DNA from: Dendrobates tinctorius
Taxonomy: Eukaryota
NCBI RefSeq assembly: GCF_039654945.1
Contig: NW_027361890.1
Span: forward strand, 18,352,001 to 18,416,000
DNA length: 64,000 nucleotides
Direction: 5' to 3'
Under the pieces are notes generated by a model that was not told where the DNA came from, did not search any database, and saw only the letters and a program-made list of their open reading frames with translations. Made by a program: the position numbers and the translations under genes. Shown here one piece after another: positions 3,001-11,305 of this stretch. Position 1 is the first letter of the stretch; the number at the start of each line of letters is the position of its first letter.

Positions 3001-5208
3001 CTAAAGGGATAAAGAATATCTAGCTGCTTCCTTCCTGGGAAGTCCTTTTCAGGGTGTTCCCAGTGCTTGAACATAATTGCTTCAAATTCCTTGTGATTAG
3101 AGAAATTCCGGGAGGGACGTTTTACCCGTTTGAAGGAGACGGAGTGCTCCTGGACAGGTGCCTTGTCCTCCTTTAGCTTCAGAGTTCCGGTAATTGCCAG
3201 GATAAGGCTATTGACCATATCCTGCAATTTTTGAGAACTGGTCCGTATCAGTCTCAGACTGGGGATCCACATCCGACCCAAAAGCTGCCACGGAGGAGGA
3301 GGCATGGGAAGAGGAGGGCAACCTAGAGGATACAGAGGGACACGGGGAACTGGAAAGAGCCCGCTTTTTTTATTTTGTTCCAAATCTGCCCCTGTGAAGG
3401 TCGCGGTCACGTGCGTGCGAATCACCGTGAGAGGCGTTTGGAGCACTGTTGGCAGTGAACAAATGTGGAAGTCGTTCCAGGATTTGGACCAGGGACTTTG
3501 AAATTTTCATCAGGTCGGGAACCGAGTGACATGGCAACAGCCCACTCCGGATGAGGGGAGTGCTCTCATCCTGGACGTTACGTTAGAGGGTTCTGTGGGG
3601 CAGACAAGGTGGAGGGACTGCAGGACAGGCAGAAAAGGCAAGGACTGGCCTGAAGACCACTTTCTTTTGCAAAGGGCAAATCACAGTGGGCTAAGAGGGG
3701 CATGAAGAAGCCTCTCTAGAGTTGAGCACAAGCTGAGCCTTGAGGATACTTCTGAGGAGGAGACAAGATAAAAAAGGAATAGAGCCTACCCGATGCCAGC
3801 AACGACCAGCAGAAAGAACTGTGGAAGCTGTGTCCCCCTTTGTGCAGAGCATCCGCAGGTCTGCAGAGAGCGCAGAATATAGCTGTGTCCCCCGTGTGCA
3901 GAGCACCAGCAGGTCTACAGAGCGGTGCAGGGGTAAGCAGAGTCTCCTTGGCTGGTTCCACAGCGCTGCAATCTGACGGCCGGCAAAAGAGAAAGCAAGC
4001 GTCCTATGGGCTGACACGCTGGGGCCTGAACAGCCAGGACAATCTGCCTACCGGCGAAAACTAAGTTTCCCCTCCAATTGGCTGACACGCCGAGGCATGA
4101 ACAGCCAGGAAGGAGGCGCTCCGTGATAGGAGTGGAAAAAGCGTGCGATGCGTGGGAAGTGCCCAGCTCAGAAGAAGGAGAGGAGGAAGACACCTCCTCT
4201 TGGATAAAAGTGTGTGATTTAAACACATGCCGGTGACTGGCCAAAGGAAAACAGGGAAGGGATGCAGCAAACAAAGGGAGTGGGGGAGTGTCTGCAAGTG
4301 CTGAGCCCGACAATGAGAAACATGACCGCGCTGCCCTGTCCCCTTGACACCTGCTGCTGCGGACGGAGACCTACGGGGAGTAACAGTCCTTCTGCAGCGA
4401 TGAGGATCGCATCAGGATTCCTCGAATGGGTGAGGGTCGCTGGGATCTGGGATCCTCCTTCCCGCACCGTCACCAGATGGTGCAGAAGATGGCGTCAACC
4501 CCTTACAAGGGGGGAGGGGAAAAGGCTAGGACCCGCAACTGGGAATCAAACTGAAGCACCCGTAAAGGTGACAGGGGACTAGGTCCTGCCTGCGGGCCTG
4601 AGAGTGGGCAATGTGGGTGACACCACACTGCTCTCTGTCGCATAAGCACAGTAAAAAGGTGAGAAATTACACCCCGTTACCCTAAGCAGAACCTGAAAGA
4701 CAGAGAAAAGATTAATAAAACACACAAGATACCTAAAAAGGAGATTTGTGTGTACTCACCGTAAAATCTCTCTCTTAGCCTCTAATTTGGGGACACAGAA
4801 CCATGGGTGTTATGCTGCTGTCCACTAGGAGGCGACACTAGGCATAATCTGAAAAGATTAACTATGGCTCCTCCTCTGCAGTATACACCCCTGGACGGCG
4901 TCAGCCTTCTCCAGTTTTGTGCAAAAGCATTAGGGGGAAGTTAACAGAAATAACATAACCATGCCTGTAATAAGGCCACCATGTTCGAGCTCAAAGAACA
5001 ATATGAGAACTCAACCGTAACAACGGCCCGTAAGGGCAACAGGGTGGGAGCTGTGTCCCCCAATTAGAGGCTAAGAGAAAGAGATTTTACTGTGAGTACA
5101 CAAAAATCTCCTTTACTCTGTCGCCTCACTGGGGAACACAGAACCATGGGACGTCCCAAAGCAGTCCCTGGGTGGGAAGCAATGGACGAATATTGTGCAG
5201 ACAGGTCC

Positions 5209-6192
5209 CTAAACTTGGGGCACTGCCGCCTGCAGAACCAGTCTACCCAGGCTCGTATCCGCTGAGGACTGGGTATGAACTCTGTAGTGTTTCGTAAACG
5301 TGTGTAAGCTAGTCCAAGTGGCCGCCTTACACACCTGTTGTGCCGAAGCCTGGTGCCGAATGGCCCAGGAGGCCCCTACCGCACGCGTAGAGTGTGCTGT
5401 GATACCGGCCGGAAGAGGAGAATTGTTAAGGCGGTAAGCCTCTTGTATGGTGGACTTGATCCACCTGGCAAGGGTAGCTTTGGAAGCCGGCAGACCCTTG
5501 CGAACGCCTTCCGGAAGAAGGAAAAGGGAATCAGACATCCGGAAGGGTGCAGTCCTAGACACGTCTATACGCAATGCCCTGACGAGGTCAAGCGTATGCA
5601 GAGCCTTCTCCACTCTGTGAACCGGAACCGGGCAAAGGGATGGCAGTGAAATTTCCTCATTGAGGTGGAAGTTGGACGCAACCTTCGGAAGGAAGGATGG
5701 GACTGTACGGAGAACCACCTTGTCCTGGTGAAAGGCTAGGAAGGGCCGTCTGCAGGAGAGTGCTGACAATTCAGACACCCTGCGAAGCGAGGTGATTGCC
5801 ACCAGAAAAACCACCTTCTGTGATAGAATGCGGAGTGGGACTTCCTTAAGGGGTTCGAAAGGTGGTGCCTGCAATGCTGTCAGGACCAGGTTGAGGTCCC
5901 ACGTTTCCAGTGGACGTCTGTAGGGGGGAACCAATCGGGAAATCCCCTGGAGAAAGGTCCTTACTTGCGGCTTGTTAGCGATGAGCCTCTGAAAAAGCAC
6001 TGAGAGCGCTGACACCTGGCTCTTAAGCGAGCCCAGGGATAGCCTGGCGTCCAGGCCCGATTGGAGAAAGCCAAGGACTTTTGGGAGGGTATAAGGGAGT
6101 GGAATCTGGCCACGAGATTCGCACCAGGTGAAGAAAGCTCTCCAGGTACGGTAATAAATCTTGGCGGAGGCTGGCTTCCGTGCCCTGATCAT
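5209..6192 (-). CDS. DIRS B tyrosine recombinase domain
   Basis: Catalytic R-H-R-Y residues: SLRRVSEL, AHSTR, TKHY. Confidence 0.9.
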   Translation of the reverse strand: MIRARKPASAKIYYRTWRAFFTWCESRGQIPLPYTLPKVLGFLQSGLDARLSLGSLKSQVSALSVLFQRLIANKPQVRTFLQGISRLVPPYRRPLETWDLNLVLTALQAPPFEPLKEVPLRILSQKVVFLVAITSLRRVSELSALSCRRPFLAFHQDKVVLRTVPSFLPKVASNFHLNEEISLPSLCPVPVHRVEKALHTLDLVRALRIDVSRTAPFRMSDSLFLLPEGVRKGLPASKATLARWIKSTIQEAYRLNNSPLPAGITAHSTRAVGASWAIRHQASAQQVCKAATWTSLHTFTKHYRVHTQSSADTSLGRLVLQAAVPQV

Positions 6193-9691: not shown

Positions 9692-11305
9692 AGTGCACTG
9701 AGTGCGGAAGGGCTGGCTATGAGAGGGCCTTACAGGGGTGCCTATGCATGGAAAAACCTATAGGAGAGCCTTACAGGAAATCCGGATACACAGCCGAGTA
9801 AAAAACCCGAGCTGTGATCTTACTCCAGCAGCGTGCCCCTAGGTCCAGCGCCGAAGATCCACAGTCCTGTGCCCTCCGGAGACTGGCTGGCGTGGTGCTG
9901 CTGATGCCTGCAGCAGAAATGGTCTCAGAGAGGATGAGGAGGGAGAAGAAGGGGGCGGAGAGCTGAGAAAGAGCACGCAGAGATGTGTAAAAACGCGCCC
10001 TTTCTGTCTCGATCTGCCCCTTCTATGACACTGTAGAGTGTCATATTTGTCATCCGGGGGGCGGGCGGAGAGGAGGCAGTGACCTCAGCTAGGCCGAAGC
10101 AGCGGCCTAAATTAGTTACCGATGCCCAGAAAGGGCTCCAGCCCGGCGCGGAAGTCCGGGAGGGGGGGTCAGATCTGAACCGGACCCCCCCCCCCCGGAT
10201 TGAAAGGCAGGATAGCAATGGGGCCACAATTGGAAGCGGGGCCCTGTGATGGGTCCCCCTGAGGCGCTATGGAGCTGGTGCTGCCGCAGAGACAGGGGCG
10301 CAGGGATCCCTGTCTGTATGTGCCATGCCTGCCCGCACTCCCCCCGGCCCCTACAGGAGCCCGCAGCTGGGCTGGGGTCCCTGGATACTGTGAGCTGCAG
10401 ATTGCCGTGGTAGACCCTACTTGAGGCGTCTCAACCTTATTCCCCCAGAGGGGGATTAGGGAGGGTGCTGCTGTCACCATCAGGGGGCTTTCTCCTTGCC
10501 TCGACCTCAACCCAAGACCAAAAGGAATTGGGGAAGGAGGGGGGTCTCGACTTCGAACCAGCACCCGCAGGACTGGGGAAGGAGCGACATGGGGAACAAC
10601 CATCTCAACTTCAACCGGGCACCCCATAATAGGGGGCCGAGGAAGGAGCCATGCCGGGAGTCTCACAGGAGACCCACTTTTCTTCATCTGTCATCCAGGA
10701 AGAAAAAAAAAAAAAAAAAACGGAGTGAAAAAGAGAAAAAATTCTTTAGGTGTGCCTCCTATGCGACACTAAGCAAAAACTGGAGGAGGCCGACGCCGTC
10801 CAGGGGTGTATACTGCAGAGGAGGAGCCATAGTTAATCTTTTCAGATTATGCATAGTGTCGCCTCCTAGTGGACAGCAGCATAACACCCATGGTTCTGTG
10901 TCCCCCAATGATGCGACAGAGTAAAGAAAAATGCGGATCTGGGATCCGATCCAGGTCCGCCTCCTACAGATACTAAGCTTAAACTGAGGTGCTTTGTGCC
11001 ACTCGATGGGCGTATACTGTTGGGGAGGAGCCATTATCCTTTATTGCCGAGTGTCAGCTTCCTAGCAACAGCAGCATACACCCATGGTAAGCTGTGTCCC
11101 CCAATAAAGAAATCCAAACCCCCTTCCCAAAAACAGTATGCTTGCCACAGTGGCCAATAATAGGCTCAATTCAGCTGATTATGCCTTAAACTCTTATTTT
11201 TGACTAACCACAAATTTTCACTTGGACAGATGACATTTTGGGTTTAGTGAGGTTTATAATTTTCAAGTGATTGTTGTCAGATATGTAATTTTGGTTAATA
11301 TTTAA

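What the first reader, a model, noticed from the sequence alone, without database searches (positions are those of the whole stretch)
4693..10730. DIRS elements are bracketed like one giant exon: acceptor behind the 5' repeat, GTRAG donor at the 3' tip
Seen on the element strand: a long pyrimidine tract plus AG follows the 5' terminal repeat in A (ttttctctgtctttcag, 4693-4694), B (T-run..gacag|AT, 10688-10689), C (T-run..gaag|AT, 23515-23516) and E (T-run..gtag|AT, 57294-57295); none is obvious in D. About 20 nt from the 3' end lies ACG|GTGAGT in B (4758-4759), C (18604-18605) and F (60754-60755). The different family D has ACG|GTAAGC (49432-49433), a change that keeps the donor consensus. I see no strong donor upstream of the acceptor inside the element. 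Inference: these sites could pair with host exons (expression by gene trapping), splice across the junction of the circular DNA intermediate, or back-splice into a near full-length circular RNA. Pairing with the ICR would mask the donor.
Basis: partly seen in the sequence, partly recalled or inferred. Interest (0 to 1): 0.75.

Follow-up and report, generated by a model that had tools for sequence, protein, structure and literature searches.

The report
Splice-like signals at DIRS retrotransposon ends
Frog DIRS jumping genes keep a motif that looks like an intron start at the top of a small hairpin near their right end, and a long T-run plus AG behind their left repeat; both are conserved, but no RNA here shows either being spliced, and together they cannot mark the RNA the element copies itself from.

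Summary
ACG|GTGAGT (B, C, F) and ACG|GTAAGC (D) sit at the stated coordinates, 19-25 nt from the 3' end. T-run plus AG follows the 5' inverted repeat in B, C and E. The site given for A is A's own 5' tip; its matching pyrimidine tract and AG are at 4530-4502.

The donor-like motif is not chance. Across 8 DIRS lineages (three here, Xenopus, Bufo, two caecilian copies, one unidentified vertebrate transcript), -1G, +1G, +2T, +4A and +5G never vary and +3 is a purine, while neighbours drift. It always tops a hairpin whose stem sequence differs between lineages (flank shuffles, combined p = 0.001). It lies in the known right extension, mirrored in the internal complementary region (ICR). That pairing buries it in a 72-bp duplex.

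Contigs of four runs show no junction at either site. The roughly 100 unique bases between repeat and AG could not be rebuilt, so a "giant exon" cannot be the replicative RNA.

Best reading (0.45): a replication hairpin, read by the reverse transcriptase or self-priming. A real U1/5' splice-site role stays open (about 0.25). One foreign contig joins INTS6 exons to a DIRS leader. All six copies lie sense in RALGAPB introns. This scan noted the same motif on another piece (s1-376919).

The parts
4741..4770 (-). Element B: right-extension hairpin (stem GAGATTT/AAATCTC) with apical ACG|GTGAGT. GT is at 4759-4758 and the element ends at about 4735.
18586..18615 (-). Element C: right-extension hairpin (stem GGATTTT/AAAATCC; the inner GTGAGTACTCAC is a perfect palindrome) with ACG|GTGAGT. 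GT is at 18605-18604 and the element ends at 18579-18582.
   Evidence: (empty-site joint 18578>23758)
60736..60765 (-). Element F: right-extension hairpin with ACG|GTGAGT (GT at 60755-60754).
49414..49443 (-). Element D (a different family): right extension with ACG|GTAAGC (GT at 49433-49432) and a weaker stem GATTT/AAATC.
54378..54407 (-). Element E (internally deleted, decayed): the hairpin stem is kept but the motif is mutated to ACG|GAGAGT.
18901..18990 (-). Element C: internal complementary region (ICR). It mirrors the right terminus, motif included, and the left terminus, and it defines the circle junction.
   Evidence: (I6)
5051..5125 (-). Element B: internal complementary region.
   Evidence: (I20)
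61051..61130 (-). Element F: internal complementary region.
   Evidence: (I9)
23515..23572 (-). Element C: 20-T run (23561-23542), then a pyrimidine tract, then AG at 23516-23515, about 100 nt behind the left inverted repeat (23616-23748).
10688..10722 (-). Element B: 18-T run (10720-10703), then AG at 10689-10688, directly followed by an ATG that opens a 172-codon ORF of unknown meaning.
57294..57350 (-). Element E: 22-T run plus a T-rich tract, then AG at 57295-57294.
4502..4530 (-). Element A: pyrimidine tract (ccttttcccctccccccttgtaag) and AG at 4503-4502. This is the positional equivalent of the T-runs in B, C and Bufo.
4693..4709 (-). It is in fact the 5' tip of element A's left terminus (TTTTCTCTGTC...), 25 nt downstream of B's 3' end.
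4785..4918 (-). B right inverted terminal repeat (partner at 10776-10909, 97% complementary).
   Evidence: I2
18630..18762 (-). C right inverted terminal repeat (partner at 23616-23748, 99% complementary, so a young copy).
   Evidence: I1
22635..22714 (-). Element C: candidate 80-nt leader intron (TGG|GTGAGT ... ctgccttcag|) just upstream of the ORF1 ATG (22623). It matches the 77-nt intron needed by the annotated Bufo gag model.
39474..39725 (-). Host RALGAPB coding exon (open-frame segment; residues 503-574 of PDB 9qwp_B). It shows that the host gene runs on the same strand as all six DIRS copies.
   Evidence: E 9e-33
15093..15284 (-). Host RALGAPB coding exon (open-frame segment; residues 1211-1262 of PDB 9qwp_B).
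   Evidence: E 2e-26; weak Rap_GAP hit

Best explanation
The two signals are conserved cis-elements of DIRS1-like retrotransposons, not the borders of an exon that the element replicates through.

The 3' 'donor' is the apical motif M-N-G|GTRAG of a small hairpin in the right extension, the segment beyond the right inverted repeat that is complementary only to the ICR. I take this hairpin to be the vertebrate counterpart of the 3'-terminal hairpin noted in Dictyostelium DIRS-1. It would be a single-strand signal for starting reverse transcription, either by self-priming or as a stem-loop read by the element's reverse transcriptase. Because such a primer or recognition hairpin is not itself copied, it must be restored from its mirror image in the ICR. 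That explains why the motif exists twice.

The 5' 'acceptor' is simply the first AG after a conserved T/pyrimidine run in the 5' leader. It may well work as a 3' splice site when a host transcript reads in, but it lies inside the replicated template.

Shown: position, conservation, stem covariation, ICR mirroring and masking, sense orientation in the host gene, and absence of junction contigs. Inferred: the priming or recognition role.
For: - Core invariant in 8 lineages while flanks drift.
- Six different stem sequences flank the same motif: GAGATTT/AAATCTC, GGATTTT/AAAATCC, GATTT/AAATC, GAAAATTA/TAATTTTC, ATTAC/GTAAT and GGAATTC/GAATTCC. Flank-shuffle Fisher p = 0.0012 (sequences).
- The hairpin spans roughly -36 to -5 from the 3' end. 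This is comparable to the DIRS-1 hairpin at 4792-4805 of 4814, proposed as a primer for reverse transcription (PMC7192593).
- The right extension and ICR are defining DIRS1 structures (PMC3266345), and the ICR is essential for DIRS-1 mobility.
- The motif decays in the dead copy E and in the ICRs of B and E. Selection therefore acts during replication, not on inserted copies.
- The young copy C (repeats 99% identical) keeps the unique T-run region. The template RNA must therefore start upstream of the 'acceptor'.
- No splice or back-splice joint was seen at either site.
- The donor is buried in a 72-bp duplex.
Against: - A recognition loop has no prior reason to match the 5' splice-site consensus at 7-8 of 9 positions in every lineage. 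The variation sits exactly where donors tolerate it (+3 purine, -2, +6), and +7 is A in 6 of 8.
- Single hairpins are weak: z from +0.2 to -2.1, and D's minimum-energy fold does not show it.
- In the full RNA the long ICR duplex out-competes the hairpin.
- No priming experiment exists for any vertebrate DIRS.
- These elements do use the spliceosome elsewhere, at the gag leader intron.
Confidence: 0.45

Rival explanations
1. The motif is a genuine U1-type 5' splice site, or a U1 snRNP docking site, and the T-run/AG is a genuine 3' splice site. Sense-oriented intronic copies such as the six in RALGAPB would be entered from host exons and left towards host exons. This would be gene-trap expression of DIRS proteins, which act in trans, or U1 would control 3'-end processing. 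ICR pairing or the hairpin would act as the switch that hides the donor in the replicative RNA.
For: - The conservation profile equals the donor consensus.
- The two caecilian copies change the exon side but keep AG|GTAAGA.
- The L013 contig reads INTS6 codons 1-143, intronless and ending ...GAG, then a DIRS leader, gag, RT, YR and the ICR.
- Abascal 2015 inferred an acceptor plus poly(A) signal in the DIRS that gave TMPO/LAP2alpha and ZNF451.
- RefSeq 'isoform X1' models of host genes (ARMT1, HNRNPA1, EIF2B2) encode DIRS recombinase ORFs.
- I saw no AATAAA or ATTAAA in the 3' regions of B, C or F as printed; this was an eye check, not a motif search.
- These DIRS carry a real short intron at gag.
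Against: - No joint at 18605/18604 or 23516/23515 in four runs.
- The donor is masked in a 72-bp duplex.
- Six sense copies in one essential gene would be hard to tolerate if both sites were strong.
- L013 may be an assembly chimera or an insertion into a processed pseudogene. Its acceptor position relative to a T-run is unknown, and alignment A3 is weak.
- D and the Xenopus copy lack a strong tract.
Confidence: 0.25
2. Donor and acceptor pair with each other across the junction of the circular DNA intermediate or a tandem array, or by back-splicing. This removes the left repeat or makes a near full-length circular RNA.
For: Across a head-to-tail junction the order donor, junction, left repeat, T-run, AG would give an intron of about 270-290 nt. 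Head-to-tail neighbours exist here (B then A; E then D).
Against: - No 'goes back' joint and no joint from 18605 to 23514.
- The product would lack the unique T-run region, so it cannot be the template.
- No benefit for expression is evident, since it would only alter a 3' UTR.
Confidence: 0.05
3. The palindrome is a DNA site for the tyrosine recombinase, which would bind as a dimer to the circle junction region.
For: There are inverted arms in double-stranded DNA close to the 3-bp crossover. DIRS integrate by tyrosine recombinase at the junction.
Against: The spacer between arms varies from 7 to 16 nt. The crossover (TTT/NTT) lies 4-6 nt outside the palindrome, not inside it, and there is no dyad symmetry around the junction itself. 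Arms covary freely while the centre is fixed, which is the reverse of a typical core site.
Confidence: 0.1
4. The resemblance is chance, plus inheritance from one ancestral DIRS. The T-run is a slippage-prone spacer without function.
For: All lineages sampled here are vertebrate DIRS1-like elements.
Against: The recombinases are only 39-56% identical between the frog and caecilian lineages, and flanking bases and stems have turned over while the core has not. The motif decays once copies die.
Confidence: 0.1

Closest known systems
Right extension and ICR of DIRS1-like retrotransposons (Piednoel et al. 2011, PMC3266345; Cappello model)
   Same: Inverted terminal repeats. An ICR complementary to both termini. 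A 19-35 nt right extension complementary only to the ICR. A TTT/NTT 3-bp junction and no target duplication. All are seen here.
   Different: That paper does not mention any conserved motif, hairpin or splice-like signal in the right extension: zero occurrences of 'splic' or 'intron'.
3'-terminal hairpin of Dictyostelium DIRS-1 mRNA (Poulter and Goodwin, cited in Malicki et al. 2020, PMC7192593)
   Same: A hairpin 9-22 nt from the element's 3' end, proposed to prime reverse transcription. The ICR is needed downstream of first-strand synthesis.
   Different: I could not read the DIRS-1 sequence, so I do not know whether its loop carries GGTRAG. Priming is unproven in either system.
3' stem-loops of 'stringent' LINEs and SINEs read by their reverse transcriptase (own knowledge, e.g. 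eel UnaL2)
   Same: A covarying stem with fixed loop bases at the 3' end of the template.
   Different: A different element class and target-primed mechanism. Those loops do not resemble splice sites.
HIV-1 major splice donor in stem-loop SL2 (own knowledge)
   Same: A GGTGAGTA-type 5' splice site displayed at the top of a hairpin in a retroelement RNA whose genomic form must stay unspliced. RNA structure modulates U1 access.
   Different: The HIV donor is in the 5' leader with acceptors downstream in the same RNA. Here the motif is at the extreme 3' end with no downstream acceptor in the element.
DIRS gag exaptation in TMPO/LAP2alpha and ZNF451 (Abascal et al. 2015, PMC4495291)
   Same: Host exons spliced onto a DIRS1 ORF1 region. 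The authors infer that the element brought an acceptor and a poly(A) signal. The gag of B, E, A and the Bufo copy carries the LAP2alpha domain.
   Different: These are ancient domesticated exons in mammals, and the acceptor was never mapped onto a DIRS leader. Nothing is said about a 3' donor.

Membership tests
DIRS1-like retrotransposon (order DIRS) | Reverse transcriptase/RNase H plus a Dam-like methyltransferase domain | tested here: met
   Pfam RVT_1 E 3e-16; RT_RNaseH 7.6e-6; Dam 6.4e-3, which is weak.
DIRS1-like retrotransposon (order DIRS) | Tyrosine recombinase ORF | tested here: met
   The 304-340 aa ORFs of B, C and F are 69-83% alike. Relatives are named Tyr recombinase or CB domain, with PF00589/PF02899/PF13495.
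DIRS1-like retrotransposon (order DIRS) | Inverted terminal repeats plus an ICR complementary to both termini, with a right extension | tested here: met
   (I1, I2, I6, I9, I12, I20).
DIRS1-like retrotransposon (order DIRS) | Insertion without target-site duplication at a 3-bp junction | tested here: met
   Empty-site contigs join 18578 to 23758 with only a 4-T ambiguity. Termini are TTT.../...TTT.
Spliceosomal 5' splice site | Match to MAG|GTRAGT, conserved more than neighbours | tested here: met
   7-8 of 9 positions in 8 lineages, with the core invariant.
Spliceosomal 5' splice site | RNA junctions that use the site | tested here: not met
   No joint at 18605/18604 in contigs of X1, X2, X7 and X9. 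Contigs drop rare forms, and whether these runs are RNA is a guess, so absence is weak.
Spliceosomal 5' splice site | Accessible to U1, with a downstream branch point and acceptor in the same transcript | tested here: not met
   The site is buried in a 72-bp duplex with the ICR. Only 19-25 nt of element follow it.
Spliceosomal 3' splice site | Polypyrimidine tract followed by AG | tested here: met
   20/20 pyrimidine windows in B, C, E and Bufo; 19/20 in the caecilian; A by alignment; weak in D and Xenopus.
Spliceosomal 3' splice site | RNA junctions that use the site | tested here: inconclusive
   None at 23516/23515. In another species L013 joins INTS6 exons to a DIRS leader, but the genomic acceptor cannot be seen.
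Self-priming / RT-recognition 3' hairpin | Hairpin near the 3' end with stem covariation | tested here: met
   Six different stems around one motif, combined p = 0.0012. Single-sequence z-scores are weak.
Self-priming / RT-recognition 3' hairpin | cDNA initiation at or next to the hairpin | not testable with these tools
   Needs 3' RACE, cDNA end mapping or a mobility assay.

The most novel reading that the evidence does not exclude
DIRS1-like retrotransposons of vertebrates carry a true U1-type 5' splice site at the apex of their terminal hairpin and a strong acceptor behind the left repeat. Copies lying sense in host introns would then be expressed from host pre-mRNA as trapped exons: entered from an upstream host exon and left to the next one. 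Pairing of the right terminus with the ICR would switch the donor off in the RNA destined for reverse transcription.
Probability: 0.2. Interest if true: 0.8.

Novelty: new variant of a known kind. Interest (0 to 1): 0.55.

Why it matters
How DIRS elements start reverse transcription and form their RNA 3' ends is unknown; no primer has been identified (PMC7192593). A short, invariant motif on a covarying hairpin exactly where DIRS-1 has its putative priming hairpin gives a concrete, mutable target.

If the motif is instead read by U1 snRNP, DIRS would be retrotransposons built to be spliced into host messages. That would help explain two independent gag exaptations (TMPO, ZNF451) and the many gene models that fuse DIRS ORFs to host genes in amphibian annotations. 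Either way, annotators of frog and caecilian genomes should expect DIRS-derived pseudo-exons.

Tried and rejected
- A recombinase alignment (A2) searched against viral and metagenome contigs found no relatives.
- Several fetched loci had no inverted-repeat/ICR ends: the tortoise loci L005 and L011, the marine contigs L007-L009, and L003/L004, which is a tandem array with a 5139-nt period. L006 looked like a Crypton. These could not be used for the right-end motif.
- DNA for the Microcaecilia EIF2B2-DIRS fusion model was withheld.
- Mapping RefSeq dendrobatid gag proteins onto the window to find leader exons failed. Identity was only 20-33% and the N-termini did not align.
- Alignment of the L013 junction with the post-T-run sequence of C, E and Bufo gave only a weak 8-10 nt resemblance. 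I do not count it as homology.
- Recombinase core site was rejected on geometry: variable spacer, crossover outside the palindrome.
- 'Giant exon as replicative RNA' was rejected because the 86-121 nt behind the left repeat are unique.
- Joints at 18740-18785 > 18877-18891 are family-specific replaced segments with non-canonical ends, not introns.

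
Full report
ANATOMY

The window holds six DIRS1-like copies, all on the minus strand.
- A runs from before position 1 to about 4709.
- B spans about 4735-10925.
- C spans 18579-23757.
- D spans about 49410-54235.
- E spans about 54372-57510 and is internally deleted.
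- F starts at 60733 and runs beyond 64000.

B and C have 133-134 nt inverted terminal repeats that are 97% and 99% complementary. B, C, E and F have an internal complementary region (ICR) about 250 nt upstream of the right terminus. Each ICR is complementary to both termini. None was found for D.

The last 35 nt or so lie outside the right repeat and are complementary only to the ICR. This is the 'right extension' of Piednoel et al. 2011.

C's borders are exact. Contigs in four runs join 18578 to 23758. These are uninterrupted copies of a Tc1-like transposon into which C inserted, with only a run of T ambiguous and no target duplication. RT, RNase H and a weak Dam-methyltransferase hit, plus a tyrosine recombinase ORF, complete the DIRS1 picture. 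The best recombinase relative is from Dendrobates tinctorius (85% identity), so the host is a poison-frog-like anuran.

THE OBSERVATION

Every donor coordinate is right: ACG|GTGAGT in B, C and F, and ACG|GTAAGC in D, each 19-25 nt from the 3' end.

T-runs of 18, 20 and 22 nt followed by AG lie 86-106 nt behind the left repeat in B, C and E.

The site named for A is A's own 5' tip. It aligns with the first bases of the left termini of B, D and a Xenopus element. A's true counterpart is a pyrimidine tract with AG at 4530-4502.

IS THE DONOR-LIKE MOTIF MORE THAN CHANCE?

In the window alone the copies are related, so I fetched independent elements through recombinase homologues.
- Xenopus laevis L001: ...AACG|GTGAGTA...
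- Bufo bufo L010, a young copy with 99% repeats: ...CCG|GTGAGT...
- Two Rhinatrema copies in L002: AAG|GTAAGA and CAG|GTAAGA.
- An unidentified vertebrate transcript contig, L013, read from its ICR: ACG|GTAAGA.

Aligned on GT, the 8 lineages keep -1G, +1G, +2T, +4A and +5G without exception. Position +3 is G or A, -3 is A or C, and +7 is A in 6 of 8. Most flanking columns carry 0.2-1 bit.

Its claims for snake, lizard, sea cucumber and scallop I did not test.

CONTEXT OF THE MOTIF

In every lineage the motif sits at the top of a hairpin whose stems differ in sequence:
- GAGATTT/AAATCTC
- GGATTTT/AAAATCC
- GATTT/AAATC
- GAAAATTA/TAATTTTC
- ATTAC/GTAAT
- GGAATTC/GAATTCC

Shuffling the flanks gives a combined p = 0.0012 over seven lineages. 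Single hairpins are weak thermodynamically.

In C and F, GTGAGTACTCAC is itself a perfect palindrome, so GTGAGT also appears in the ICR on the same strand.

Folding C's last 421 nt pairs the right terminus with the ICR over 72 bp (-212.9 against -119.9 kcal/mol for shuffles, z = -16).

The hairpin's position, about 5-36 nt from the end, matches the hairpin at 4792-4805 of the 4814-nt Dictyostelium DIRS-1. Poulter and Goodwin suggested that hairpin might prime reverse transcription. The same paper shows the ICR is essential downstream of first-strand synthesis and that no primer is known.

THE ACCEPTOR SIDE

The T/pyrimidine run is itself conserved.
- Bufo has a 24-T run at +61.
- The caecilian has 19/20 pyrimidines at +100.
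- A has a C/T tract at the aligned position.
- D and the deleted Xenopus copy have only weak tracts.

Given such a tract, a nearby AG is trivial.

Two points limit the reading.
- The 86-121 nt between the left repeat and the AG occur nowhere else in the element. An RNA that starts at the AG, whether a trapped exon or a circular RNA, could not restore them, yet the young copy C has them. The acceptor/donor pair therefore cannot bound the replicative template.
- ORF1 starts far downstream, and a promoter-like cluster and a short intron lie in between (see 'In passing').

RNA EVIDENCE

Contigs of four runs from three studies were laid on C at 90% likeness. Whether these runs are RNA is a guess.
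- They gave no joint at 18605/18604 or 23516/23515 and no back-splice.
- The joints seen are the Tc1 empty site, family-specific replaced segments, and internal deletions.
- Contigs cannot show rare isoforms, so this is absence of support rather than refutation.

Positive evidence comes only from elsewhere. Logan contig L013 (5494 nt) carries INTS6 codons 1-143 without introns (PDB 7cun_F, E 1e-80; similarity stops at residue 143, and the host part ends ...GAG). These run straight into a DIRS leader 372 nt upstream of gag, then gag, RT, recombinase and the ICR. It is most simply a host exon spliced to a DIRS leader. An assembly chimera or an insertion in a processed pseudogene is not excluded, and the genomic acceptor is unseen.

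Abascal et al. 2015 inferred an acceptor plus poly(A) signal in the DIRS that colonised TMPO and ZNF451.

HOST CONTEXT

Two open-frame segments on the minus strand match RalGAP-beta. Segment 39474-39725 matches residues 503-574 and 15093-15284 matches residues 1211-1262 of PDB 9qwp_B. RALGAPB therefore runs on the same strand as all six DIRS copies, which lie sense in its introns.

It also argues that the sites are not strongly used, since six 5-kb pseudo-exons in one gene should be costly. A/B and D/E are adjacent, so independent insertions number about four and the orientation bias is not significant.

VERDICT

The motifs are real and under selection during DIRS replication.
- Most likely (0.45): the right-end motif is part of a single-strand replication signal, a priming or RT-recognition hairpin restored from the ICR.
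- The precise fit to the 5' splice-site consensus keeps a true U1/splice-donor role alive (0.25), probably for expression from host transcripts rather than replication.
- Circle-junction splicing or back-splicing (0.05), a recombinase site (0.1) and chance (0.1) are less likely.

I found no description of this motif in the DIRS literature that I could search.

IN PASSING

The Bufo gag model needs a 77-nt intron (ACA|GTGAGT...ttcag|). C has an analogous 80-nt candidate at 22714-22635, preceded by ETS/Sp1/TATA-like motifs. This agrees with note s1-376925.

Noticed in passing
window 1-64000, minus strand; exon segments 39474-39725 and 15093-15284: The host gene RALGAPB runs on the minus strand, so all six DIRS copies lie in the sense orientation inside its introns. 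This is unusual for large retroelements. A/B and D/E are adjacent head-to-tail, which may reflect DIRS inserting next to DIRS.
   Followed up: partly
window 22635-22930 (-); L010 4438-4750: Between the T-run and ORF1 there is a promoter-like cluster. In C it has four CCGGAAGT-type ETS sites, GC boxes and a TATA-like box; in Bufo it has two TGACGTCA sites plus TATAAAA. A short intron of 80 nt (C candidate) or 77 nt (Bufo, required by the annotated 446-aa gag) follows. An internal promoter downstream of the left repeat would be odd for a retrotransposon.
   Followed up: partly
window 23470-23505 (-); E about 57245-57285; B about 10655-10675: A conserved stem-loop lies right after the AG (C: GGGGCGACGGATCC...GGATCCGATCTCCCC). 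E shows a compensatory T-A to C-G change. Bufo has a similar GGGCCGAGGTCGGATC motif directly after its T-run.
   Followed up: no
window 18450-18578 and 23758-23900: Element C is inserted in a Tc1/mariner-like DNA transposon. The flanks encode transposase-like motifs. Contigs from other, uninterrupted copies give the exact empty site.
   Followed up: partly
window 19073-22519 (-): C has 99% identical terminal repeats but lacks the LAP2alpha part of gag that A, B and E have (no tblastn hit between 22100 and 23500). One 1149-codon frame runs through RT and recombinase and overlaps the RNase H/methyltransferase frame. C may be a young gag-deleted, non-autonomous variant.
   Followed up: no
L013 1-520 (Logan SRR6291263): A chimeric contig: the INTS6 5' UTR and codons 1-143, then a full DIRS from leader to ICR. 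The species is unknown.
   Followed up: partly
proteins P0034, P0099, P0101 and many Ranitomeya imitator entries: Public gene models name DIRS recombinase ORFs as isoforms of host genes or fuse them to host genes. Examples are ARMT1, HNRNPA1 and EIF2B2 in caecilians, and myosin, ACC, Rab21, STXBP2 and others in R. imitator. They are either real chimeric transcripts or a systematic annotation artefact in amphibian genomes.
   Followed up: partly
L003/L004 (ENA ERZ25069326 ctg76142, 17.5 kb): A tandem array with a 5139-nt period of a DIRS-like element (recombinase 39% identical). It lacks classic inverted repeats but has a 317-nt imperfect palindrome after the recombinase gene.
   Followed up: no
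window 37198-38900 and 12522-13307: A long low-complexity array of 8-16 nt units (46+ overlapping copies) and a 41-nt tandem repeat, both in RALGAPB introns.
   Followed up: no
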